Positions 1,042 through 26,673 of a DNA stretch of 64,000 nt are shown one piece after another. Every line of letters begins with the position of its first letter. Within the stretch, counting starts at the first letter, position 1. The translations under genes and the position numbers were made by a program. The stretch comes from Heptranchias perlo (lineage: Eukaryota), in assembly GCF_035084215.1 (NCBI RefSeq), contig NC_090363.1:6448001-6512000 (forward strand). The letters are read 5' to 3'. The notes below the pieces were generated by a model. It worked only from the letters and a program-made list of their open reading frames with translations, did no database searches and was not told where the DNA came from.

Positions 1042-1084
1042 ATGCACCCAAGCCCCATCCTGTGGATATTTGCTGTCTTTTCCG
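1042..1084 (+). CDS. Gene A signal-peptide exon (MHPSPILWIFAVFS)
   Basis: ctgcag|gaaaaATG...TCC G|gtaagt. 43 nt, phase 1, same length as and homologous to the leader exons of genes B and C. Confidence 0.85.
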
Positions 1085-4000
1085 GTAAGTGGACATTCCA
1101 TTGTTTCTTAAGGATATAAGTCCGCCATGAGTGGTAGCTCATAAACGGGCGATGCCTCCTCCCTCCCTACTTCATCTCATCCTATCAGCATATCCTTCTA
1201 TTCCTTTCTCCCTCATGTGTTTATCTAGCTTCTCCTTAAAGGCATCAATCCAATCTCCTCAACTACTCCTTGTGGGAGCGAGTTCCACATTCTAACCACT
1301 CTCTGAGTAAAGAAGTTTCTCCTGAATTCCCTATTGGATTTATTAGTGATTATCTTATATTTATAGCCCCTAGTTCTGGTCTCCCCCCACAAGTGGAATA
1401 ATCTTCCCTACGTCTTCCCTAACAAACCCTTCCATTATCTTAAAGACCTCGATCAGGTCACCCCTCAGCCTTCTCTTTTCTAGAGAAAAGAGCCCCAGCC
1501 TGTTCGATCTTTCCTGATAGGTTCTGGTATCGCCCTTGTAAATGTTTGTTGCACCTTCTCCAGTGCCTCTGGATGCTTTTTATAATATGGAGTCCAGAAC
1601 TGTGCACAGTACTCTTAAGTGTGATCCAACCAAGATTCTATACAAGTTAAAGGTTAAGAAATTCTGCCAGGGCTAATAATTGAATGGACACTCTGTCTTA
1701 ATGATTGGTTCTGCGTATGCGACAGAGACGTGGATGTAGATTTTCAACTTGCCATCTGGTAAATCGACCAGTCAATCAGCAAGGCCAGTTTTAGGCCCAA
1801 CCAGCAAGCTATAGAATCAAACCGCTGGGGATCAGATTTGTTATTTGAATGAACTTCAGTAATGAGCACTAATGTATCACAGGTTGATGTACCATTACAA
1901 TTTTTTTTATATTCGTTCATGGGATGTGGCGAGGCCGGCATTTATTGCCCATCCCTAATTGCCCTTGAGAAGGTGGTGGTGAGCCGCCTTCTTGACAACT
2001 GAGTGGCCACATTTCAGAGAGCGATTAAGAATCAACCACATTTATGTGCGTCTGGAGTCACATATAGGCCAGACCGGGTAAGGACGGCAGGTTTCCTTCC
2101 CTAAAGGACATTAGTGAACCAGATGGGTTTTTACAAAAATCTGGTAGTTTCATGGCCACCATTACTGATACTAGTTTTTTTTAAAATGCAGATTTTATTT
2201 TTAATTAAATTAAAATTCCCAGTGACTATAGTGGGATTTGAACTCATAACTCTAGATTACCAATCCAGTAACATAACCACTATGCTACCAGACCCTTTTA
2301 ATGTAGATGCCTTTATGTGTTATTTTTATATTATTAAGGAGCTTAAGAAGTACATTCTACAGGGGAGGAAACTGTGAAAAGGTTGAGAGAGATGAGACCA
2401 ATTAAGTAATGCTTAGTTGAGGTAAATATTAGATTTTGAGAGTCTATCAATTATAAGAAGACAAGGAGGTGAGGAGCTATGAAGTCCGAGGAGAGAATGG
2501 GGTCGGGCAGGAGACAGCGCTGAATCCTGATTTCAACACAGGGAGGATACAGGGAGCCGGAACCACTCTCGTTTGCCTGGCCTCTCGACCATGAGGATGT
2601 CCTGCATATGGTCGGGGTGTTGAACTGCAAGTGAAGGGACTCTTAGTCAAGGGTAAAGGATCGATGAAATCCACTGATCGTAGAATGATACAGCACGGAG
2701 GAGGCCATTTGGCCCATCGTTCCTGTGCTGGCTGTTTGAAAGAGCTATCCAATTAGTCCCACTCCCCCTGCTGTTCCCCATAACCCTGCACTTTTTATTC
2801 CTTTTCAAGTATTTATCCAATTCCCTTTTGAAAGTTACTATTGAATCTGCTTCCACCGCCCTTTCAGGCAGTGCGTTCCGGATCATTACAACTCACTGTG
2901 TGAAAACACTTCTCCTCATCCCCACCCCCTGTGTTTTTTTAAACTCGTACACTTCATAACCATTGCTGCAAGACTATCTCCCAAATTTCCAACTTCCAGC
3001 TGCCAGAATGGCTTCCCTATGGGAAACTCCGATGGGAGAATCAACCCCTCAGCTGCAGAGAGGAGATTATTTAACCATTTTAAATAACTGGTTACTGACT
3101 GGGGGGTGAACTCGGACATGGGTGAGGGGACGTAAAACAGATGGAATCGCATTTGCTGCCTGCTATACCACACATCGGATATTCAATGTTATTATGGCAA
3201 TGGAACTTAATATCGGTGCAGCTTTTAACCATTTCTGCAAGACTGTCTCTCAAATGTGGAACTTCTAATCAGGTAAAATCGACTTTTATTGTTTGATTTC
3301 CAGGATTTAACGCTGAGAAGTTCACAGTTGTTCAAAAGGTGCCCAGTATTCTCGCAGAGGAAGGGCAGACAGTGCACCTCCCCTGTACCCACACACCCAA
3401 TGTCTCTGGGACAATATGGGCTTATTCCTGGTACAAGGACGCCAGAAATGGAACAGAAGTTTCCAACGGAACAGCAGGGTTCAGAGGTCGGATCTCCAGG
3501 CCTAAAGAAGATGATTTTTTTCATACCGGAGACGCTGCCATTCTAATAAAGGAGGTGAGACCGAACGATTCCGGGGTGTATTACTGCAAAGTGGCAATTA
3601 TGCAACACGGAGAGGAATATGGACCAGGAACAAATCTCACTGTGAGGGGTAAGTGATTCGCCTGCCTGCAACATCGTGCGACCAACGGGTGGGAGAATCG
3701 GCGCCACAATACTGTGTCCCTATCCCCGACTGGCGCCTCTGCCAGAATGGCTTCCCTATGGGGAACTCCAATGGCGGACTCGCCCCTCAGCTGCAGGGAG
3801 GAGACTATTTAACCATTTTGAATAACTGGTTACTGACTGGGGGGTGAACTCGGACACGGGCGGGGGGGGACGCAAAACAGATGGAATCGCGTTTGTCGCA
3901 CACCCGATATTCAAAGCTATTGATGGCAATGGATGTTAATATCGGGCGCAGCGTGTAACGGGCGACCGATGCCAGAGCGCCTGTTTTTGCATCCACGCTG

Positions 4001-7000
4001 GTGGCCAATCTCACGGCCACGGGGTCCAAACAGCGCGGAGAAATTTAATGGGAAGGTATTAACAGCTGAGTTAAAAATAACACACGACAGAAATCAAGTC
4101 TATTGGTTGGTACCATGGTTATAAAGACGGGGACGGGCCTGACAAAAACAAGCCCATATTGGACTTCGAACCAATATCCGACTCACTGCCCTGCTCTGCC
4201 CTCTGACCGAGGGCGGGTCGTGCCTTTTGGTGGCCGGTGAGTGTTGTCGCTAATCAGGACTGCGCCCTGAAAGTTGGCCCCTCGTAACCGTTTCTGCAAG
4301 ACTGTCTCTCAAAGTTCCAACTTCCAATCAGGGTAAGATCGACTTTTATTGTTTGATTTCCAGGATTTAACCCTGAGAAGTTCACAGTTGTTCAAAAGGT
4401 GCCCAGTATTCTCGCAGAGGAAGGGCAGACAGTGCACCTCCCCTGTACCCACACATCCAATGTCTCTGGGACAATATGGGCTTATTCCTGGTACAAGGAC
4501 TCCAGAAATGGAACAGAAGTTTCCAACGGAACAGCAGGGTTCAGAGGTCGGATCTCCAGGCCTAAAGAAGATTATTTTTTTCATACCGGAGACGCTTCCA
4601 TTCTAATAAAGGAGGTGAGACCGAACGATTCCGGGGTGTATTACTGCAAAGTGGAAATTGTTAAACACGGAGAGGAATATGGACCAGGAACAAATCTCAC
4701 TGTGAGGGGTAAGTGATTCGCCTGCCTGCAATATCGTGCGACCAACGGGTGGGAGAATTGGCGCCACAATACTGTGTCCCTATCCCCGACTGGCGCCTCT
4801 GCCAGAATGGCTTCCCTATGGGGAATTCCAATGGCGGACTCGCCCCTCAGCTGCAGGGAGGAGATTATTTAACCATTTTAAATAACTGGTTACTGACTGG
4901 GGGGTGAACTCGGACACGGGCGGGGGGACGCAAAACAGATGGAATTGCGTTTGCCGCCCGCGATACCACACACCCGATATTCAAAGCTATTGATGGCAAT
5001 GGTGATGATCCGGATTCTTTCCCCTCAGTCTGGTTCAGTAAAAACTGAGTCGAGTACATTTTAAAGTTCATCACAACTTTAATAGCAGGGTTCTTAGTCT
5101 GCAGCATTGATTTGGACTCCTGATAAAGTCCCTCTATGCTGGCAGAGCAAGAACAAGAAACATACAGAAATCCACACGTTTTTATACAGATCAGTAGGGG
5201 TTGGAACATACTTAACGAGGGTCAACACCAATCATAAGCCGGGCATAGGTTGCCATGCGAGGTTACATTATTGCCGGCCAATCATAGATCGTCCATGTGC
5301 TGATCATGCTGCTGTTAGACATCAAAGGGGATAACTTCCTCACCTTCCAACCTGGAATGTTCTTTCCTGTTCCTTCTGTTCCTTATCTCCCAACTTGGAA
5401 TGTCTTTCAACTTTGGCTAAGCTCGTTACCTATATTGATCTTCCATAAACATGGAGACATTCAGACCAGTCCTTGAATCACATCAAAGACTCTACATTGA
5501 TAAGACAATGCAAACCTGCTGACTACGCAAACATATGGCCCAGCAGGAGGCCAGGCCACCTGTACCAATCTCAGTTACTAACTAATTAACCCTTTCTAAC
5601 CATTTTGCATTCTGCTTCTTTGCCACGTAGGCATCTTAATATTTTACCGAAAACTGACCACGTTGGGATTCTCATTGGATGTTAATATCGGGCGCAGCGT
5701 GTAACGGGCGACCGATGCCAGAGCGCCTGTTTTGCGTCCATGCTGGTGGCCAATCTCACGGCCACGGGGTCTAAACAGCGTGGAGAAATTTAATGGGAAG
5801 GTATTAACAGCTGAGTTAAAAATAAGACACGTCAGAAATCAAATCTGTTGGTTGGTACCATGGTTATAAAGACGGGGACGGGCCTGACAAAAACAAGCCC
5901 ATATTGGACTTCGAACCAATATCCGACTCACTGCCCTGCTCTGCCCTCTGACCGAGGGCGGGTCGTGCCTTTTGGTGGCCGGTGAGTGTTGTCGCTAATC
6001 GGGACTGCGCCCTGAAAGTTGGCCCCTCGTAACCGTTTCTGCAAGACTGTCTCTCAACGTTCCAACTCCCAATCGGGTTAAGACTGACTTTTATTGTTTG
6101 ATTTCCAGGATTTAACCCTGAAAAGTTCACAGTTGTTCAAAACGTGCCCAGTATTCTCGCAGAGGAAGGGCAGACAGTGCACCTCCCCTGCTCCCACACA
6201 TCCAATGTCTCTGGGACAATATGGGCTTATTCCTGGTACAAGGACTCCAGAAATGGAACAGAAGTTTCCAACGGAACAGCAGGGTTCAGAGGTCGGATCT
6301 CCAGGCCTAAAGAAGATGATTTTTTTCATACCGGAGACGCTTCCATTCTAATAAAGGATGTGAGAGTGAGCGATTCCGGGGTGTATTACTGCAAAGTGGC
6401 AATTATGCAACACGGAGAGGAATATGGACCAGGAACAAATCTCACTGTGAGGGGTAAGTGATTCGCCTGCCTGCAATATCGTGCGACCAACGGGTGGGAG
6501 AATCAGCGCCACAATACTGTGTCCCTATCCCCGACTGGCGCCTCTGCCAGAATGGCTTCCCTATGGGGAACTCCAATGGCGGACTCGCCCCTCAGCTACA
6601 GGGAGGAGAATATTTAACCATTTTAAATAACTGGTTACTGATCAGAGGTGAAATTGGACTTAGCGGCGACGCAAAACAGGCAGAATCGCTTTTGCGGACT
6701 GTCGTACCACACCCCCGATAGTCAATGCTATTGATGTCTAAGAAAATTAATATCAGCAGGAGAGAATAACCGGCTTCTGATGCGATGCTGCCTGTTTTGC
6801 GCCCCCCCAAGTAGGTCAGACAGTGCCCTTTCATAATGGGGTGGATCATACAAGGGGTTCGACACTGTCCTTTCCCCCTCTGGGACTGGGTGGTACAGTG
6901 GGTCAGACACTGTCCTTTCCCCCTCTGGGACTGGGTGGTACAGTGGGTCACACACTGTCCTTTCCCCTCTGGGACTGGGCGGTACAGTGGGTCAGACACT

Positions 7001-10000
7001 GTCCTTTCCCCCTCTGGGACTGGGTGGTACAGTGGGTCACACACTGTCCTTTCCCCTCTGGGACTGGGCGGTACAGTGGGTCAGACACTGACCTTTCCCC
7101 CTCTGGGACTGGGTGGTACAGTGGGTCACACACTGTCCTTTCCCCCTCTGGGACTGGGTGGTGCAGTGGGTCAGACACTGTCCTTTCCCCCTCTGGGACT
7201 GGGTGGTACAGTGGGTCAGACACTGTCCTTTCCCCCTCTGGGACAGGGCGGGGTGGATTCTAACTTGTTCTGCCCATTATAAATGGGGTAGTTGCAGCAT
7301 TAAGATAGCGTTTACCAGTTAATGCCCGCTCTCCCACCGACATGCCGAGTGTCCGCCTGTTTCAGTTAGTAGGAACTTTAAATATGCAAATTAGAGTGTT
7401 ATACCCTGCACAGGATCCTGATTACCATTTTGGGAGGCAACTGTGCAGTTTATTCTAAAATCACCAAAAGCAAGTGGACAGGTACGAAACATAATCTAAA
7501 AAGCTTATGGAATGTTGGCCTTTATTGCAAAGGGGGCATCAATACAAAGGGGTTGTAATTATGTTACAGGTCAATAAAGCCCTGGTTAGACCGCACCTGG
7601 AATAATGTGATCAGCTCTGGGCACCACACCTCAGGGAGGATATATTGGCCTTGGAGGGAGTGCAGTGTGTGGATTCACCAGAATATGGTTAAATAATGAG
7701 GACAGGCTGCACAGACTAGTCTCGTATTCCCTTGATTATAGAAGATTAAGGGGTGATCTAATTGAGGTGCTTAAGATGGTTAAAGGGTTTTACAGGGTGC
7801 ATAAAGAAAAACTATTCCCTCTGTTGCGGGGAGTGCAGAACAAGGGGGCGTAACCTTTAAATTAGAGCCAGGCCGTTTGGGGGTGATGTCAGGAAGCGTT
7901 TCTTCACACAAAGGGGAGTGGAAATCTGGAACTCTCTCCCCCAAAAAGCTGTTGAGGCCGGAGGGGATCAATAGCAAATTTCAAAACTGCGATTGATAGA
8001 TTTTTGTTAGGTAAAGGGTATTCCGGGCTCTGGAACGGAGGCGGGTAGCTGGAGTTAAGATACAGATCAGCCATGATCTAATTAAATGGGGAACAGGCTC
8101 GAGGGGCTGAGTGGCCTGCTCCTGGTCCTGTGTTCTGATCTGATTTGCTTTCTCCTCCACAGAGAAAACAAAATCAATCCCGGCTGTATTGTTAATCCTG
8201 TTCATCAGTGTAGGGGTGGAAGCGAGTGTCCTTCTAATCGTTGTACTCCTCTGCCTGAAGTTCCAAAGAATGAAAGGTAAGGGTGGTCATCATTTGCTGT
8301 TTGAAAAACGCTAGGGCCTTGAAACTGTGCGGAGGGAACATTGACAGCTGAATACTTAAGGCAGAAGTATCTAATCTGCAGCCCTAGCGGTACGGTGGCA
8401 AGTGGGTATGTTGGTGTAGTGGTGTTGGCACTGGACCAGTGAGCCAGTGGCCGCGAGTTAGAACCACACCATCGCTGGCTGTGAGGTTAAATTTAATAAA
8501 TGGGTTAAATTAGCAGCAGGGGAAAATGGCGTTGAAAGTTACGAGATTTTTGTACAAACCCAGTTGGGAATGTGTCATGGCGTCCTGGACTACAAGTAAC
8601 ATCAGTTGACACTTGGTGCTGTCTCAAGTACGAGCGACTTAGTTATAACAGCAACTGCTTCGAGAAAAGGCCCACCACCTTCTCAGGGAAACGAAAGAGG
8701 GGTAATAAAGGTCACCTACACGAACAAATAAAAAGGGTCATTTTAAACTAACTCGCTGGGCGGGAGTCCCAAGGGATCGGGTGGATCGCTAGTTTTAGAC
8801 CCAGGCCAATATTACTTCCTGTTGGCTTCAATGGAGAGTAAAATCGAGTGGGATGTCAAACCAGCGTTGCCCCCCCCCCAATCCGGTCAGTTTCCAGACG
8901 GGCGGGTTAGGTTAAAATTGCCCCCATGTTCGTCCTGAGAGCCAGTAACGCAACCTTTGTAGCCAACGAAACGTAACGCCATTTTGTGTGTAATGGGGCA
9001 GAAATCCATCTCGTGCAGGTCGACTTAAATGGGCAGGACGTTCAGCAGGCGGCCAATGCGATACTGTGCAAGGTGAATTTCTACGATGTTTCTCAGTTTG
9101 GTGGGTCTCGAGTTTTTTTTTGAAAAGAGCTGATTTTTAAAAAAAACTTACTGTTGTTTGGTTGCTGGATAAATCCTTAATCACCAACATCTGTCCGTAG
9201 GAGCAAGTTGAGACAATTGCAAATTAATGGGTCGTGGATTTAGACTTTACATGGGAGTCCCCTCCCCAAGTCGCAGTGGTACACACCTGTGTGGACCAGG
9301 AGGACTAAAGCTTGGACACCCTCTGCTCTGTGTCCATATTACATTTCTTATGCTTGACACTATGCTGTCAAAAACAGGTGTATGAAGGTTTAATGGGTTT
9401 GTGTGAAGTTGTTTTCTCCATTAGCATAACATAAAGCATAGTTGTCCAATGAACAGATTAACCCCTCCCTCAAAATAGCAGACTAGGGAATTTAGTTAGA
9501 ACCTATTGAACAATTGCATAGTGATAAGCCCTAAGACATTCCCTTTGATTTAGAATATTAATAATTGCGTACAAATTACAGCACAGAAACATAGGAACTT
9601 AGGAACAGGAGTAGGTCATTTAGCCCCTCGAGCCTATTCCTCCATTCAATGAGATCATGGTTGATCTGTGACCTAACTCCATTTACCCGCCTTAGCCCCA
9701 TATCCCTTAATACCTTTGGTTAACAACAATCTACCAATCTCAGATTTAAAATTAACAATTGAGCTAGCATCAACTGCCATTTGCGGAAGAGCGTTCCAAA
9801 CCTCTACCACCCTTTGTGTGTAGAAGTGTTTTCTAATCTCACTCCTGAAGGTCCTGGATCTAATTTTTATGCTACGTCCCCTAGTCCTAGAATCCCCAAC
9901 CAGCGGAAATAGTTTCTTTCTTGCCACCTTATTAGTTCCCTTAATGTCTTGAAAACTTCGATCAAATCACCCCTTAATCTTCTAAATTCCTGGGAACACA

Positions 10001-13000
10001 ACCCTAGTTTGTGCAACCCCTCCTTGTTAATTAACCCTTGGAATCCAGGTATCATTCTGATAAATCTACGCTGCACTCCCTCCAAGGCCAATATATCCTT
10101 CCTAAGGTGTGAACACAGTACTCCAGGCGTGGTCTAACCAGGGCTTTGTATAGCTGTAGCATAACTTCTACCCTTAGTCCTCGAGATATAAAGGCCATTA
10201 GCCTTTTTGATTATTTTCTGTACCTGGCCATTCAGCCCAACTGGCTTATGCCGGTGTTTATGCTGCACACGAGCCTTCTATCACCCTGCTTTATATCACC
10301 CTATCAGCAGAACCTGCTATTCTTGGGTACTTATCTAGCTTCCCCTTAAATGCATCTATGCTATTCGCCTCAACTACTCCATGTGGTAGCAAGTTCCACA
10401 TTCTAACCACTCTCTGGGTAAAGATGTTTCTCCTGAATTCCTTATTAGTTTTATTAGTGACTATCTTATATTTATGACCTCTAGTTTTGGATTTCCCCCA
10501 TATGCAGAAACATCTTCTCAATGTCTACCCTATCAAATTTTCAAGACTTCTATTAGGTCACCCCTCAGCCTTCTCTTTTCTAGAAATACATTTTAAAATT
10601 AAATAGATTTTAAAGAATAAAAGAAACAACATGCATTGATGCAGTACTTTATCACGTCTCTCATACATGTTGAACCGCTTCACACAATGGATTATTTTGA
10701 AGTGAATTCACTATTTTTACCTGGGCAAGAATGGCAATGATAAGAAATAAGAGAGAAGAAATGTCAAGTATTTCACAATCCACTTTTCTTTCTTATCTCC
10801 CTTTTCATTAGGCATTCGACAGGCTCAAAGGTGGGTAGTTGTCAGCAAACATACATTCATATGATAAGAAATGGGCAGTCAACACATGTCAGCACAGGCC
10901 GTTCACCTCTTTCATTTCCTTGCTCTGCAGACAAGGAACTGTTTTTCCAGAAGTCACTTACGTGCCGGGTAAGTACAGCTGGTTTTGATTCCTGGGACAA
11001 ACAATATAAGTTTCTATGGGGATATTTTTTAGAATCATACAGTGCACAAGGAGGCCATTCATGCCCATGCCGCCTCCTTGAAAAGGCTTTCCAATTAGTC
11101 CCACTCCCCTGCTCTTTCCCCGTAGCCCTGTAATTTTCCCCCTTCAAGGATTTATCCAATTCCCTTTTGAAAGTTACTATTGAATCTGCTTCCACCGCCC
11201 TTTCAGGCAGTGCATTCCAGATCAGAACAACTCGCTGTGTAAAAACATTCTCCTCATCTCCCCTCTGCTACTTTTGCCAATTACCTTAAATCCGTGTCCT
11301 CTGGTTACCGACCCTCCTGAGAGTGGAAACAGTTTCTCCTTATTTACTTTATCAAAGCCGCTCATAATTTTGAACACCTCGATTAAATCTCCCATTAACC
11401 TTCTCTGCTCTAAGGAGAACAACCCCAGCTTCTCCAGTCTCGCCACATAACTGAAGTCTCTCATCCCTGGTACCGTTCTAATAAATCTCCCCTGCACCCC
11501 TCTCCAAGGCCTTGACATCCTTCCTAAAGTGTGGTGCCCAGAATTGGACACAATGCTCCAACTGAGACCTAACCAGTGATTAGAGCCCAGTTATTACTAT
11601 TTGTGATATCAGTGTATGAATACCTGGGACATTGGGCGTTGGATAGATTAAGTAGAATGGGCCTATACTCACAGGAGTTTAGAAGAATGAGAGGTAATCT
11701 TATTGAAACATATAAGATTCTGAGGGGGCTTGACAGGGTAGATGATTATAGGTTGTTTTCCCTGGCTGACGAGTCTAGAACTAGGGGGCATAGTCTCAGG
11801 ATAAGGGGTCGGCCATCTAAGACTGAAATGAGAAGGAATTTCTTCACTCAGAGGATTGTGAATCTTTGGAATTCTCTACCCCAGAGGGCTGTGGATGCTG
11901 AGTCATTGAATATATTCAAGACTGAGATAGATTTTTGAACTCTAAGGGAATCAAGGGATATGGGGATCGGGCGGGAAAGTGGATTTGAGGCCGAAGATCA
12001 GCCATGATCTTATTGAATGGCGGAGCAGGCTCGAGGGGCCGTATGGCCTACTCCTGCTCCTATTGCTTATGTTCTTATTGTTCTGTCTGCTCTTTTAAGA
12101 GATATTGAGGGCGAAATTTAGACATGGGTGGGGAAACAAAATAAGTGAAATCGGATTTGCTGACCATTGTGAGCCAGACCAGATAGTCAGTTCTATTGAA
12201 GTCTGTGCAACTGAATATTGGGTGTGTTTTATATATAAAACGGGTGACCCACATGATACCGCCTGGTTTGTGTTCATGTTCATGTCTAATCTCACCCTCC
12301 CACATTGAGGAAAACCATTTGTCGGGCAATCGGAAAGACGTTCTTTTTGAGTGTGTTTATTTACTGCACGTAGTGAACAGAATAAATCTTCGTCATTTAT
12401 TTCACACGGGCTATTTCTCCTTTTGATACAACAGACACAGGAATTTGTTAACAATATGTTACGTGTTCATATACGGACTGTAAGTTCGAGGCTATTTTTC
12501 CCCAATGTTTCAACTGCAAATGAGAGAAAACATTAAATTATCGCTCGAGTTTTAACTTACACTTGAATTGACCGAGTGCAACTACAGCCTTATAGCATTT
12601 TTTTGAAGTTGGATTTTTGTAGTTTTAAAGCAACTCAGTCAGACACTCCAGGATGCCTCAGTGGTTCGGATTTTGGGGGTAATTTTAACCTAACTCGCCA
12701 GGCGAGAATCCCATGGGATCAGGTGGAATGGCGATTCTACCCCACGCCAAATATTACTTTCCGTTTACTTGATTGGAGCGTTAAATTGGGCAGGGTGTAA
12801 AACCAACGTTTCATCCAATCCAGTCAGCTTTCCAATGGGCGGGTTAATTTAAAATTGTTCCCCCAATTGCCTTTTTTGAAATGTATAATTCACTTTGTTT
12901 TTGTAAAATGCGGTCAGTTGCTTTGCCAAACATTATCTGCTGAAAGCATTTCTTAAAATGCAAGGTTTACAATGAAACTTAATTAAAAAAAAACACGTCC

Positions 13001-25000: not shown

Positions 25001-26329
25001 GAAATACACACAGATAGAGTGATATAGGACCTTAGCTGTGGTCTTTGCTCTCCCCTTATCTACATCGAGAGAGCTTAGGTGCAGATTGGCAGGGCTAAGG
25101 CCACAGGGCTACTGCTGGTGTTTAGCTAGTTCAAAGAAAGGGCAAAGCAATTTCCACTACGAGGGGCTGAATGGCCTACTCCTGTTCCTATGTTCCTATG
25201 AGTGTGGCAATCTACTGCAACACTCAGTAACGCCGATGATTTTGCTAAAAAGTAGAATGGAACGCATTGTCCCTGGTAAGGTGATCCTGGCTAAACAAGA
25301 GTGCAGTAGTGTAGTGGTTATGTTACTAGACTAGTAATCTAGATGCCTGGACTAATAATCCAGAGAATGACCCACCACAGCAGTTGCGGAATTTGAATTC
25401 AGTTGAAAAAAATCTGGAAATAAAAAGCTGGTTTCAGCATAAAATGACCATGAAGTTATCAGATTGTCATAATAACCCAACTGGTTCACTAATGTCCTTT
25501 AGGGAAGGAAACCTACCGTCCTTACCCAGTCTGGGCCTATATGTGACTCCAGTCCCACACCAATGGGGTTGACTTTTAACTTCTCTCTGAAGTGGCCGAC
25601 CAAACCACTCAGTTGGGGAAACTAGGGAATGGGCATTAAATTCTCGGCTTGCCAGCGACGCCCACATCCCGAGAATGAATTTTAAAAACGGATATTAAGG
25701 TATTAGCTTACAGGGTTACCTGGTGCAGAAGCGGGAAAGATTCTTCACTGTTATGTGACAGGTCTGCCCCTTCGGGTCCCATTGATGAGCCAGCCTGGCT
25801 GATAAATCATCAACAGTCCTCTGGAACACAGCAGACCTGCCTGTACGACCATGATTACAATAAAGAATCAATTATCGACCTGCTGTTGAAGTTTGTGATT
25901 AAAATAAACTATTTGATGCACTGCGTTAACCTTGATAGTTATAATGTGGAGATGCCGGTGATGGACTGGGGTGGACAAAAGTAAGGAGTCTTACAACACC
26001 AGGTTATAGTCCAACAGTTTTATAACTGTTATTTTATAACTGTTATTTTATAACTGTTATTTTATAACAACAGGACTATAACCTGGTGTTGTAAGACTCC
26101 TTATATTTGATAGTTATACACTGATATTTAAGTGGGACACTCTAGTCTTTACCAGTGTTCAGGATGTACTGTTTAACCCAGTTGAATGTAATATACTTTT
26201 GTATCTTCATAATTTAAGCAGGAAAATGGAGCAGATTCCGACCAGTGCCCTTGGGTGGCGAATGACGATCGCAAAGACAAAAATCTGTCTAAAGGCCCAT
26301 CTTCTACTGTGTACACAGAAGTGCAGTAG
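1042..26329 (+). CDS. Gene A: NKp30/NCR3-like receptor with three tandem VJ-type Ig domains and a long ITIM/ITSM tail (about 578 aa, 16 exons)
   Basis: Exons 1042-1084, 3304-3648, 4364-4708, 6109-6453, 8163-8276, 10812-10830, 10931-10968, 13840-13880, 15879-15920, 16009-16052, 18462-18499 (GC donor), 19568-19608, 20294-20391, 22388-22422, 24518-24558, 26222-26329. All have AG acceptors and GT donors (one GC) and are phase-compatible. They total 1737 nt, open to TAG, with AATAAA at 26668. Confidence 0.75.
1155..1650 (-). mobile_element. CR1-type LINE 3' fragment
   Basis: Degenerate RRLRGDLIEV...FFTQRVVRMWNSL coding on the minus strand. Confidence 0.75.
1910..2290 (-). mobile_element. tRNA-derived SINE with LINE-derived 3' tail
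   Basis: tRNA-like head (tagtggttatg...gagttcaaatcc). The 3' end is shared with the LINE at 44130-44755. Confidence 0.7.
2681..2916 (-). mobile_element. CR1-type LINE 3' fragment
   Basis: NALPERAVEADSIVTFKRELDKYL plus 3' tail. Confidence 0.8.
3304..3648 (+). CDS. Gene A V exon 1 (NKp30-like VJ-type Ig domain)
   Basis: tttccag|...G|gtaagt, 345 nt, phase 1/1. Motifs LPC, W, EVSNGTAGFRGRI (human NKp30 recalled as EVRNGTPEFRGRL), DSGVYYC and J-like YGPGTNLTV. Confidence 0.93.
4364..4708 (+). CDS. Gene A V exon 2
   Basis: Intact 345-nt copy with the same splice sites, 1060 bp after V1. Confidence 0.92.
5003..5674. mobile_element. Solo LTR-like insertion (672 bp) between V2 and V3
   Basis: Absent from the homologous site after V1 (ggcaatgg/atgttaat). 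TG...CA ends, short imperfect terminal inverted repeat, 4-bp TSD atgg/ttgg (one mismatch). Confidence 0.7.
6109..6453 (+). CDS. Gene A V exon 3
   Basis: Intact 345-nt copy with the same splice sites, 1745 bp after V2. Confidence 0.92.
6861..7250. repeat. Minisatellite, 44-45 bp unit, about 8.5 copies
   Basis: Unit cactgtcctttccccctctgggactgggtggtacagtgggtcaga. Confidence 0.95.
7455..8137 (+). mobile_element. CR1-type LINE 3' fragment ending just before the gene A TM acceptor
   Basis: LVRPHLE...RRLRGDLIEV...FFTQR plus tail. Confidence 0.85.
8163..8276 (+). CDS. Gene A stalk/transmembrane exon (EKTKSIPAVLLILFISVGVEASVLLIVVLLCLKFQRMK)
   Basis: ttctcctccacag|...AAA G|gtaagg, 114 nt, phase 1/1. 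A hydrophobic stretch is followed by basic stop-transfer residues. Confidence 0.88.
9586..10585 (-). mobile_element. Two adjacent CR1-type LINE 3' fragments
   Basis: ORF-track peptides 9673-10091 and 10291-10521 match the CR1 ORF2 C-terminus. Confidence 0.85.
10812..19608 (+). CDS. Gene A proximal cytoplasmic micro-exons (7 exons of 19-44 nt; VTYVP, SIYIPM)
   Basis: Exons 10812-10830, 10931-10968, 13840-13880, 15879-15920, 16009-16052, 18462-18499, 19568-19608. Each has a pyrimidine-rich acceptor and a donor; the phases chain 1-2-1-0-0-2-1-0. Confidence 0.65.
11029..11580 (-). mobile_element. CR1-type LINE 3' fragment
   Basis: LEKLGLFSLEQRRLMGDLIEVFKI. Confidence 0.85.
11640..12076 (+). mobile_element. 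CR1-type LINE 3' fragment
   Basis: GLYSQEFRRMRGNLIETYKI...FFTQRIVNLWNSLP plus tail. Confidence 0.85.
13248..13465. mobile_element. Penelope-type short element forming a perfect 186-bp palindrome with hammerhead motifs
   Basis: 13280-13372 is the exact reverse complement of 13373-13465. TSD taacatctcactga lies on both sides. A CTGAGGA...GAAA core is present in each arm. Confidence 0.75.
13374..13412 (+). ncRNA. Minimal type I hammerhead ribozyme motif (mirror copy on the - strand at about 13333-13371)
   Basis: ttcac-CTGAGGA-a-ggagg(aag)cctcc-GAAA-gc-tt-gtgaa: stem I, core, stem II and the palindromic mini stem III typical of Penelope-associated hammerheads. Confidence 0.55.
14866..15014. repeat. 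Degenerate tandem repeat, about 50 bp x3
   Basis: cccaatgtgttggttac...atagtgggaagatttc occurs three times. Confidence 0.7.
15015..15616 (+). mobile_element. Solo LTR (602 bp)
   Basis: TGTGGAAA...TTTCGACA termini, perfect 4-bp TSD cttt, TATAAA at 15448 and AATAAA at 15533. Confidence 0.8.
16206..17165 (-). mobile_element. Possible solo LTR (about 960 bp)
   Basis: TGTGA...TCACA termini and a minus-strand TATA at about 16563. The TSD is poor. Confidence 0.35.
20294..20391 (+). CDS. Gene A cytoplasmic exon with ITIM IQYASL
   Basis: ccattcaaacag|KTATGSIQYASLQKSYLKKRPSLNLIVEYCDS|gtgagt, 98 nt, phase 0/2. Confidence 0.75.
20888..20957. repeat. 22-bp tandem repeat, 3.2 copies
   Basis: gtgcaggtcgtacccctggcct, three perfect copies. 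Confidence 0.95.
22388..24558 (+). CDS. Gene A cytoplasmic micro-exons 22388-22422 (EHDYEYDELNVI) and 24518-24558 (ARHDLNPQGMLVNP)
   Basis: Strong polypyrimidine acceptors, gtaaat and gtaaga donors, phases 2/1 and 1/0. Confidence 0.7.
23176..23550 (-). mobile_element. CR1-type LINE 3' fragment
   Basis: Same subfamily sequence as 11029-11580. Confidence 0.8.
25303..25682 (+). mobile_element. tRNA-derived SINE, same family as 1910-2290
   Basis: Shares the ctggttcactaatgtcctttagggaaggaaacc core and the gcccacatccc..gaatgaat tail. Confidence 0.7.
25944..26106. mobile_element. Second Penelope-type inverted element, centre replaced by a 14-bp tandem repeat
   Basis: Same tgtggagatgccggtgatggactgggg start as 13248, 31-bp inverted arms, TSD ttgatagttata. 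Confidence 0.7.
26222..26329 (+). CDS. Gene A terminal exon with ITSM (...GPSSTVYTEVQ*)
   Basis: Acceptor aatttaagcag|GAA, phase 0, open to TAG at 26327-26329. TxYxxV consensus at the extreme C-terminus. Confidence 0.8.
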   Translation, partial: ENGADSDQCPWVANDDRKDKNLSKGPSSTVYTEVQ

Positions 26330-26667: not shown

Positions 26668-26673
26668 AATAAA
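26668..26673 (+). terminator. Candidate poly(A) signal of gene A
   Basis: AATAAA about 340 nt after the stop codon. Confidence 0.45.

What the first reader, a model, noticed from the sequence alone, without database searches (positions are those of the whole stretch)
10812..26329. Hidden 11-exon tail combining YxxM, ITIM and ITSM, built from a thrice-repeated exon module
Seen: the ORF track does not show this tail. Exon sizes and phases recur as [38, 41, 42+44], [38, 41, 98], [35, 41, 108], and the three 41-nt exons end GATCCG, AATCGG and AATCCG before gtaag. Motifs are VTYVP, SIYIPM (YxxM at 16036), IQYASL (20312), YEYDEL and TVYTEV (26306). Established: YxxM binds PI3K p85 (CD28/ICOS), ITIM+ITSM is the PD-1/BTLA-type SHP-recruiting pair, and ITSMs can also bind SAP. 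Inference: a switchable checkpoint-like receptor with an NKp30 ectodomain.
Basis: partly seen in the sequence, partly recalled or inferred. Interest (0 to 1): 0.8.

Follow-up and report, generated by a model that had tools for sequence, protein, structure and literature searches.

The report
Shark NKp30-like receptor's micro-exon signalling tail
The eleven tiny exons are real: they encode the long tyrosine-motif tail of an inhibitory-type shark relative of the NK-cell receptor NKp30, a tail shared with other sharks and a ray, but the claimed PD-1-like ITIM+ITSM "switch" is only partly borne out.

Summary
Observation confirmed. Eleven exons (19-111 nt) between 10812 and 26329 follow the leader, three V exons and the TM exon of one + strand gene. 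All have AG acceptors and GT donors (one GC donor). The frame stays open to TAG at 26327-26329, and every motif sits at the stated coordinate.

The tail is not chance. RefSeq models from Heterodontus francisci, Scyliorhinus canicula, Chiloscyllium punctatum and the ray Mobula hypostoma carry the same segments in the same order. tblastn of their tails lands on T2-T11, and one Heterodontus model holds all eleven equivalents.

- **Conserved:** Y-x-P-M, a canonical ITIM, and Y-[DE]-E-L-N 28-30 residues after the ITIM.
- **Not conserved:** the VTYVP tyrosine and the terminal ITSM. The ITSM lies 81 residues from the ITIM, unlike PD-1/BTLA.
- **"Thrice-repeated module":** real in sizes and phases, but sequence similarity is detectable only for T7/T10.

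No transcript evidence could be obtained for this species. The V domain's best solved relatives are human NKp30.

Verdict: a new member of a known kind, the elasmobranch NCR3 family. The scan also noted NKp30-like clusters 437-625 kb upstream in this genome.

The parts
1042..1084 (+). Leader exon of gene A (ATG at 1042; ends in phase 1)
   Evidence: hydrophobic signal peptide, donor gtaagt
3304..3648 (+). V exon a (345 nt, phase 1-1), NKp30-like VJ-type V-set domain
   Evidence: best PDB hits are human NKp30 at E 1.5e-14; Pfam V-set at 1.3e-13
4364..4708 (+). V exon b (345 nt, phase 1-1), 97% identical to exon a
6109..6453 (+). V exon c (345 nt, phase 1-1), 96.5% identical to exon a
8163..8276 (+). 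Stalk/transmembrane exon with a mid-membrane Glu; ends in phase 1
   Evidence: 21/37 identical to the Heterodontus TM segment, which has Glu at the same place
10812..10830 (+). T1, 19 nt, phase 1 to 2. With T2 it forms a 57-nt (19-residue) unit
   Evidence: The unit is repeated 3x (P0007/P0151) or 2x (P0156) in Heterodontus models. T1 alone is too short to score
10931..10968 (+). T2, 38 nt, phase 2 to 1; VTYVP (Tyr not conserved)
13840..13880 (+). T3, 41 nt, phase 1 to 0
14151..14188 (+). Candidate extra exon (38 nt, AG/gtaatg). In phase 0 it gives a stop at its third codon, so it could be a truncating alternative exon or a decayed one
   Evidence: No homology hit. Heterodontus has truncated-tail isoforms (P0154)
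15879..15920 (+). T4, 42 nt, phase 0 to 0; Leu-Leu segment; a cassette exon in Heterodontus isoforms
   Evidence: (E 1.5e-4); absent from P0007 but present in P0151
16009..16052 (+). T5, 44 nt, phase 0 to 2; SIYIPM = conserved Y-x-P-M (Tyr codon at 16036)
18462..18499 (+). T6, 38 nt, phase 2 to 1; GC donor (gcaagt)
   Evidence: Mobula HSP at 18460-18492. The GT 4 nt downstream would break the frame
19568..19608 (+). T7, 41 nt, phase 1 to 0. An alternative in-frame acceptor would start it at 19574 (35 nt)
20294..20391 (+). T8, 98 nt, phase 0 to 2; canonical ITIM IQYASL (from 20312), plus two further Tyr
   Evidence: E 8e-5; score 80, 0/500 shuffles
22388..22422 (+). T9, 35 nt, phase 2 to 1; YEYDEL = conserved Y-[DE]-E-L-N, 29 residues after the ITIM Tyr
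24518..24558 (+). T10, 41 nt, phase 1 to 0
   Evidence: HSP at 24514-24546 against P0153
26219..26329 (+). T11, last coding exon (108 nt + TAG at 26327-26329); TVYTEV ITSM-type motif from 26306, specific to this gene
   Evidence: The first 10 residues are conserved in Heterodontus; the end is not
26668..26673 (+). AATAAA, a likely polyadenylation signal about 340 nt after the stop
   Evidence: read; not otherwise tested

Best explanation
Gene A (1042-26329, + strand) is an inhibitory-type member of the cartilaginous-fish NCR3/NKp30-like receptor family. It encodes a signal peptide, three near-identical NKp30-like V domains and a transmembrane helix with a buried Glu. Its intrinsically unstructured cytoplasmic tail of about 188 residues is spread over eleven micro-exons.

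**Shown**
- The exon chain is open, and it is collinear with annotated tails in four other elasmobranch species.
- Three motifs are conserved: Y-x-P-M (T5), a canonical ITIM (T8), and Y-[DE]-E-L-N (T9) at a fixed 28-30 residues after the ITIM.

**Inferred**
- After ligand binding, Src-family kinases phosphorylate these tyrosines.
- The ITIM and the Y-[DE]-E-L pair, spaced like the tandem ITIMs of KIR, LAIR-1 and PECAM-1, dock the tandem SH2 domains of SHP-1/SHP-2. This damps signals from activating partners such as the Arg-TM, short-tail gene B in the same window.
- The Y-x-P-M site, which resembles the IRS-1 YMPM and the CD28 type, can bind PI3K p85.
- The terminal TVYTEV is a lineage-specific extra site of uncertain use.

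Because T4 (42 nt) and T6-T8 (177 nt) are frame-preserving, alternative splicing can add or remove the di-leucine segment and the ITIM. Heterodontus RefSeq isoforms do exactly this, which is how PECAM-1 tunes SHP-2 binding.
For: - Splice sites, phases and open frame.
- V domain closest to human NKp30.
- Relatives with the same tail. They are RefSeq models named uncharacterized protein, turtle-like or SIRP-beta-like, from H. francisci, S. canicula, C. punctatum and M. hypostoma.
- Per-exon collinear alignments.
- Unbiased tblastn of the relatives' tails onto the window hits T2-T11 only, in order.
- Conserved motif trio and spacing: with my codon arithmetic (YxxM to ITIM 40 residues, ITIM to YDEL 29, YDEL to ITSM 52).
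- Cassette behaviour: P0007 against P0151 (T4 with extra exons), and P0153 (T5 joined to T9).
- Gene B with Arg in its TM and a short tail.
- PECAM-1 precedent, with eight alternatively spliced cytoplasmic exons and loss of exon 14 abolishing SHP-2 binding: PMC5664058.
- ITIM/ITSM consensus: PMC11460946.
Against: - There is no transcript evidence for this species. The only runs offered (three 'RNA?' contig sets from the same sample) cover only interspersed repeats in 20330-26329 and none of T8, T9 or T11.
- RefSeq relatives are computed models.
- Y-[DE]-E-L-N is not a canonical ITIM. Position -2 is Tyr, Phe or Asp, and it equally resembles the Src-family SH2 optimum pYEEI.
- No binding partner was tested.
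- Motif counts alone are only weakly above chance.
Confidence: 0.75

Rival explanations
1. The gene is real, but the tail acts mainly as a positive or dual signalling platform. Y-x-P-M would recruit PI3K as in CD28, ICOS or DAP10. Y-[DE]-E-L would dock Src-family kinase SH2 domains. The terminal TxYxxV would recruit SAP/EAT-2 as in the SLAM family. The ITIM would only modulate.
For: - Y-x-P-M is conserved as strongly as the ITIM.
- Y-[DE]-E-L is close to the pYEEI optimum (established knowledge).
- Heterodontus isoform P0153 drops the ITIM cassette but keeps Y-E-E-L-N.
- ITSMs can relay activating signals (PMC11460946).
Against: - The ITSM is not conserved.
- A canonical ITIM with a fixed-distance second YxxL is the hallmark of SHP-recruiting receptors.
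- A neighbouring Arg-TM short-tail paralogue fits the usual activating/inhibitory pairing.
Confidence: 0.2
2. The exon model is partly wrong for this species, so the real motif set differs. Possible errors are: T7 uses the downstream AG (35 nt); the 14151-14188 exon is included and truncates the protein after T3; or the transcript ends before T11, so the ITSM is never made.
For: - Tandem AGs at T7, with relatives having the shorter form.
- Good splice signals at 14151-14188 with an in-phase stop.
- Heterodontus isoforms that stop early (P0002, P0154).
- No reads on the exons.
Against: - All eleven exons keep one frame.
- All but the 5-residue T1 have a positional homologue.
- T11 starts with a conserved 10-residue block and is followed by AATAAA.
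Confidence: 0.15
3. Gene A is a silent or decaying recent duplicate, or an assembly artefact of the V-exon triplication, and the tail is a relic.
For: - Three V exons are 96-97% identical.
- No expression was seen in the runs offered.
Against: - All 16 exons are intact with good splice sites.
- A Heterodontus relative also has three V domains.
- The runs were small, of unknown tissue, and only guessed to be RNA.
Confidence: 0.05

Closest known systems
Long-tail NCR3/NKp30-like genes of other elasmobranchs. These are RefSeq models from Heterodontus francisci (e.g. XP_067865770-5), Scyliorhinus canicula XP_038671255, Chiloscyllium punctatum XP_072406317 and Mobula hypostoma XP_062903900. The shark NCR3 family was described by Kinlein et al. 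2021 (Immunogenetics 73:333), a paper not held here and recalled only from its abstract.
   Same: - V domain 50-71% identical.
- A polar residue in the middle of the TM helix.
- The same order of tail segments T1-T11.
- The conserved Y-x-P-M, ITIM and Y-[DE]-E-L-N trio.
- One Heterodontus gene also has three V domains.
   Different: - This gene adds a terminal TxYxxV, a Tyr in T2 and one in T8 (VEYC). The VEYC tyrosine is shared with only one Heterodontus gene.
- It has a single copy of the T1+T2 unit, which is doubled or tripled in Heterodontus.
- Its three V exons are a very recent triplication.
Human NKp30 (NCR3)
   Same: The VJ-type V-set ectodomain is the best match among all solved structures.
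   Different: Human NKp30 has one Ig domain, an Arg in the TM helix for CD3-zeta/FcR-gamma, and a short tail without motifs. Here there are three V exons, a Glu in the TM helix and a tail of about 188 residues with tyrosine motifs.
PECAM-1 (CD31)
   Same: - The cytoplasmic domain is split over many short exons that are alternatively spliced.
- It has an ITIM plus a second Tyr motif that recruit SHP-2.
- Loss of one exon removes SHP-2 binding (PMC5664058).
   Different: The ectodomain is unrelated (six Ig C2 domains). No sequence homology of the tails was detected, and this gene has no Pfam hit in its tail.
PD-1 / BTLA (ITIM + ITSM checkpoint receptors)
   Same: A single-pass IgV receptor with an ITIM and a TxYxxV/I motif. 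From memory, BTLA also has a third, Grb2/PI3K-type motif.
   Different: The ITIM-ITSM distance here is 81 residues against about 25. The ITSM is not conserved in relatives, and the conserved partner is a YxxL. The ectodomain belongs to a different V family.
LST1 (neighbour of NCR3 in the mammalian MHC class III region)
   Same: A small ITIM-bearing, SHP-1/2-binding protein with extensive alternative splicing, encoded in MHC class III (PMC8111073). From memory, its first ITIM resembles the xxYASLQ of T8.
   Different: It has no Ig domain. No Pfam match of any family, LST1 included, to the Heterodontus tail or to T8 and T11 even at E up to 10, so any relationship is unproven.

Membership tests
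NKp30/NCR3 (mammalian type) | VJ-type V-set Ig domain closest to NKp30 | tested here: met
   four NKp30 PDB entries at E 1.5e-14 to 2e-14, next family (butyrophilin) at 3e-7. Pfam V-set.
NKp30/NCR3 (mammalian type) | Single Ig domain | tested here: inconclusive
   There are three intact phase 1-1 V exons, and a Heterodontus relative has three V domains. No transcript shows how many are included here.
NKp30/NCR3 (mammalian type) | Basic (Arg) residue in the TM helix for ITAM adaptor pairing | tested here: not met
   the TM exon has a Glu and no Arg or Lys within the helix. Gene B in the window has the Arg.
NKp30/NCR3 (mammalian type) | Short cytoplasmic tail without signalling motifs | tested here: not met
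   T1-T11 encode 182 residues with 8 Tyr.
NKp30/NCR3 (mammalian type) | Binds B7-H6 | not testable with these tools
   Needs a binding assay.
Elasmobranch long-tail NCR3-like subfamily | Collinear tail segments T1-T11 | tested here: met
   P0156 carries all of them in one model.
Elasmobranch long-tail NCR3-like subfamily | Conserved Y-x-P-M, ITIM and Y-[DE]-E-L-N with 28-30 residue ITIM-YxxL spacing | tested here: met
   (four species). In the window the spacing is 29 residues, from the coordinates.
ITIM/ITSM checkpoint receptors (PD-1/BTLA type) | Cytoplasmic (S/I/V/L)xYxx(I/V/L) | tested here: met
   IQYASL in T8. Consensus from PMC11460946.
ITIM/ITSM checkpoint receptors (PD-1/BTLA type) | TxYxx(V/I) about 25 residues after the ITIM, conserved | tested here: not met
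   TVYTEV is present but lies 81 residues downstream. It is absent from all relatives found.
ITIM/ITSM checkpoint receptors (PD-1/BTLA type) | Recruits SHP-1/SHP-2 (or SAP) on phosphorylation | not testable with these tools
   Needs pull-down or reporter assays.
YxxM PI3K-coupled receptors (CD28/ICOS/DAP10 type) | Cytoplasmic YxxM | tested here: met
   YIPM in T5. Y-x-P-M is found in four other species, and lost in one Heterodontus gene.
YxxM PI3K-coupled receptors (CD28/ICOS/DAP10 type) | p85 SH2 binding | not testable with these tools
   Needs a binding assay.

The most novel reading that the evidence does not exclude
The Y-x-P-M / ITIM / Y-[DE]-E-L-N tail is an ancient signalling cassette of the NKp30 family, shared by sharks and rays. 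Its output would be set by splicing: skipping the 177-nt T6-T8 block removes the ITIM and leaves the PI3K-type and Src-SH2-type sites. On this reading the ancestral NKp30 was a splice-tunable inhibitory/co-stimulatory receptor, and mammals kept only the tail-less activating form. The ITIM-bearing, heavily spliced LST1 next to NCR3 could then be a remnant of such a tail.
Probability: 0.15. Interest if true: 0.65.

Novelty: new member of a known kind. Interest (0 to 1): 0.4.

Why it matters
It gives a full, homology-backed exon map for an inhibitory-type NKp30-family receptor that ORF-based annotation would miss.

It also separates the tyrosine motifs under long-term conservation across sharks and a ray from the lineage-specific ones. 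The conserved set is Y-x-P-M, the ITIM, and Y-[DE]-E-L-N at fixed spacing. The lineage-specific set is the ITSM and VTYVP.

That sharpens the picture of NKp30 as an anciently paired activating/inhibitory family. It also names the peptides and the cassette exons (T4, T6-T8) worth testing for phosphatase or PI3K binding and for splice-regulated signalling.

Tried and rejected
1. **RNA evidence.** The single sequencing-run run gave only three 'RNA?' contig sets from the assembly's own sample. Laid on 20330-26329, they cover only interspersed repeats and none of T8, T9 or T11.
3. **Joined spliced model.** All searches and alignments were exon by exon, or used relatives' database proteins.
4. I stopped that step, so gene C's exon sizes are read by eye only. 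The earlier script had also used typed anchors, and later scripts used coordinates only.
5. **Nucleotide similarity.** blastn-short found none among the tail exons or to genes B and C.
6. **Family and look-alike searches on the tail.** Pfam at E up to 10 and the ESM Atlas found nothing, and no LST1 match.
7. **Key papers not held.** These are Kinlein 2021 (PMC8273117) and Flajnik 2012 (PMC3709836). I therefore could not check whether this tail type is already described.
8. **Rejected readings.** A chance ORF chain is excluded. A PD-1-type ITIM/ITSM pair is excluded by spacing and lack of conservation.
Full report
**What is in the sequence**

The window's first 26 kb hold one + strand gene. Its upstream parts are:
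- a leader exon at 1042-1084;
- three 345-nt V exons at 3304-3648, 4364-4708 and 6109-6453, all phase 1-1 and 96-97% identical to each other;
- a stalk/TM exon at 8163-8276.

| Exon | Coordinates | Size (nt) |
|---|---|---|
| T1 | 10812-10830 | 19 |
| T2 | 10931-10968 | 38 |
| T3 | 13840-13880 | 41 |
| T4 | 15879-15920 | 42 |
| T5 | 16009-16052 | 44 |
| T6 | 18462-18499 | 38 |
| T7 | 19568-19608 | 41 |
| T8 | 20294-20391 | 98 |
| T9 | 22388-22422 | 35 |
| T10 | 24518-24558 | 41 |
| T11 | 26219-26329 | 108 + TAG |

Every exon follows a pyrimidine-rich AG. Every exon is followed by a GT donor, except T6, which has the GC-AG type donor gcaagt. Starting from the phase-1 end of the TM exon, the frame stays open through all eleven exons, with entry phases 1,2,1,0,0,2,1,0,2,1,0. 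Translation was done exon by exon, with split codons handled separately.

VTYVP is in T2. SIYIPM is in T5, with its Tyr codon at 16036. IQYASL in T8 starts at 20312. YEYDEL is in T9. TVYTEV in T11 starts at 26306. T1-T11 encode 182 residues with 8 Tyr. An AATAAA lies about 340 nt after the stop. No in-frame ORF of 60 aa or more covers these exons, so 'hidden from the ORF track' is correct.

**Is it more than chance?**

Motifs alone are weak evidence. I used the permutation test of PMC11460946 on this tail's composition. Shuffles contain 2 or more ITIM/ITSM in 9%, at least one YxxM in 16%, and both in 1.3%.

The decisive evidence is comparative. A phmmer search of V exon a against 1.84 billion representatives returned relatives whose C-terminal parts carry the same tail segments in the same order. 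According to these are RefSeq models from four species:
- Heterodontus francisci (several genes and isoforms);
- Scyliorhinus canicula XP_038671255;
- Chiloscyllium punctatum XP_072406317;
- the ray Mobula hypostoma XP_062903900.

A tail-restricted word search added a Heterodontus model (P0156, 365 aa) that contains equivalents of all of T1-T11 in one protein.

Per-exon local alignments are collinear. Against P0156, none of 500 shuffles reached the observed score for T4, T5, T7 and T8. One, 2, 5 and 7 shuffles did for T9, T11, T3 and T10 respectively. T1, T2 and T6 are too short to score alone, but they sit at the expected positions.

As a check that did not depend on my exon picks, I ran tblastn of the relatives' tails against the whole window. 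It gives hits at 10929-10958, 13836-13883, 15879-15920, 16009-16050, 18460-18492, 19567-19608, 20291-20392, 22389-22427, 24514-24546 and 26219-26311. That is T2 to T11, in order, on the + strand.

**What is conserved and what is not**

Three motifs recur in all four other species:
- Y-x-P-M;
- a canonical ITIM of the form [IV]-[QH]-Y-[AT]-x-[LI];
- Y-[DE]-E-L-N, whose Tyr lies 28-30 residues after the ITIM Tyr. In the window the distance is 29.

Not conserved:
- The T2 tyrosine is Ser or Thr in relatives.
- The terminal ITSM is missing everywhere else. Two Heterodontus genes have a clearly homologous last exon, with the same first ten residues, but end without any Tyr. The Scyliorhinus, Chiloscyllium and Mobula models end differently.

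In the window the ITSM Tyr is 81 residues after the ITIM Tyr (29 + 52). This is far from the roughly 25 residues of PD-1 or BTLA, a figure I give from memory. The functional pair suggested by conservation is therefore ITIM + Y-[DE]-E-L, not ITIM + ITSM.

**The 'thrice-repeated module'**

The size and phase periodicity is real. Without T4, which is a 0-0 cassette absent from Heterodontus isoform P0007 but present in P0151, the chain reads [38,41,44], [38,41,98], [35,41,108], with phases 2 to 1 to 0 to 2. The three 41-mers end as quoted.

Sequence similarity is thin:
- Ungapped identity is 20/41 for T7 against T10 (p about 0.0004 by shuffling).
- It is 15/38 for T2 against T6 (p about 0.03).
- T3 against T7 or T10 is not significant.
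- blastn-short finds nothing.

Segment lengths in relatives imply about 35 nt for the T7 equivalent and about 38 nt for the T10 equivalent. In the window T7 itself has a second in-frame AG 6 nt downstream that would give 35 nt. The '41' recurrence is therefore not a conserved feature.

What the family demonstrably does is duplicate micro-exon units. The 57-nt T1+T2 unit (19 residues) is present three times in Heterodontus P0007/P0151 and twice in P0156. Gene C in this window, read by eye, appears to be built from 22-nt + 35/38-nt doublets. An old triplication is plausible but only partly supported.

**What it is**

The V domain's best matches among all solved structures are the four human NKp30 entries at E about 1.5e-14. 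That is seven orders of magnitude better than the next family. Pfam sees only V-set.

The tail has no Pfam match even at E up to 10, and no look-alike in the ESM Atlas. This is expected for a disordered signalling tail.

The window also holds two paralogues on the minus strand:
- Gene B has its V exon at 39880-39535 and an Arg-containing TM exon near 37790-37665, with a stop soon after. This is the activating design.
- Gene C has its own micro-exon tail.

Gene A is thus the long-tail, inhibitory-type member of a paired NKp30-like cluster. The scan's other notes place more such clusters 437-625 kb upstream, near an MHC class III block (unchecked).

**How it most likely works**

Shown: the anatomy and the conservation.

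Inferred from established SH2 biology:
- Tyrosine phosphorylation of the ITIM and of the YxxL 29 residues later creates a bidentate site for the tandem SH2 domains of SHP-1/SHP-2.
- Y-x-P-M matches the p85 SH2 consensus, as in IRS-1 YMPM and CD28 YMNM.
- Y-[DE]-E-L also resembles the Src-family SH2 optimum, so a dual role cannot be excluded.

Frame-preserving cassettes exist. T4 is 42 nt and T6-T8 total 177 nt. Heterodontus RefSeq isoforms omit exactly these: P0007 lacks T4, and P0153 joins T5 to T9. Others stop early (P0002, P0154). This parallels PECAM-1. Its eight cytoplasmic exons are alternatively spliced, and its exon-14-less form cannot bind SHP-2 (PMC5664058).

**Limits**
- No transcript evidence was obtained for this species. 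The three runs offered are small contig sets only guessed to be RNA. They cover only repeats in 20330-26329. None was listed that holds the exons, which is not the same as none existing.
- The joined spliced protein was deliberately not searched.
- The two papers most likely to describe this family's tails are not held. My statement that the shark NCR3 family is known rests on memory of the abstract of Kinlein et al. 2021 and on citations seen.

**Verdict**

The NKp30-like ectodomain, the ITIM and the YxxM are sound. The ITSM 'switch' and the PD-1/BTLA analogy are not.

This is a new member of a known kind. It is of moderate interest for the conserved three-motif cassette and its splice-cassette architecture.

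Noticed in passing
window 13233-13478 and 25932-26118: Two intronic insertions share an identical 27-nt head (13248-13274 and 25945-25971; none expected by chance). Each head is followed by a hairpin: one has 93-nt arms, 100% complementary and with no loop; the other has 50-nt arms at 84%. Each insertion is flanked by 12-15-nt direct repeats that look like target-site duplications. In the 'RNA?' runs the bin 25930-26129 has a summed contig depth above 100,000, and loose ends pile up at 25944. It looks like a mobile snap-back element of unknown type.
   Followed up: partly
window 14151-14188: A 38-nt candidate exon with a good acceptor and a gtaatg donor lies between T3 and T4. In phase 0 it gives a stop at its third codon, so inclusion would yield a tail without any conserved Tyr motif. 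Heterodontus has comparable early-stop isoforms.
   Followed up: partly
window 19566-19574: Tandem acceptors 6 nt apart at T7 give a 41-nt or a 35-nt exon, both in frame. Relatives have the shorter, 12-residue form.
   Followed up: partly
window 3304-6453: Three intact, phase-symmetric V exons are 96-97% identical. A Heterodontus relative (XP_067865770) has three much more diverged V domains in one model, so multi-V NKp30-like receptors exist and seem to arise repeatedly.
   Followed up: partly
window 8163-8276: There is a Glu in the middle of the TM helix of this long-tail gene. The same position is Glu, Thr, Gln, His or Asn in relatives, so it is always polar.
   Followed up: partly
window 39880-37545 (minus strand): Gene B has a V exon 94% identical to gene A's, an Arg-containing TM exon and a very short tail. 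This is the activating counterpart, in inverted orientation.
   Followed up: partly
window 57240-50420 (minus strand): Gene C has a diverged V exon and a TM exon. Read by eye, its tail consists of 22-nt + 35/38-nt exon doublets and ends in a TxYxxV motif.
   Followed up: no
window 6880-7250: A tandem repeat of about 72 nt (about five copies) lies in the intron between V exon c and the TM exon.
   Followed up: no
window 15879-15920: T4 carries an acidic di-leucine-like segment. The Leu-Leu is conserved in relatives, and the exon is optional in Heterodontus isoforms. It may be a splice-regulated sorting or internalisation signal.
   Followed up: no
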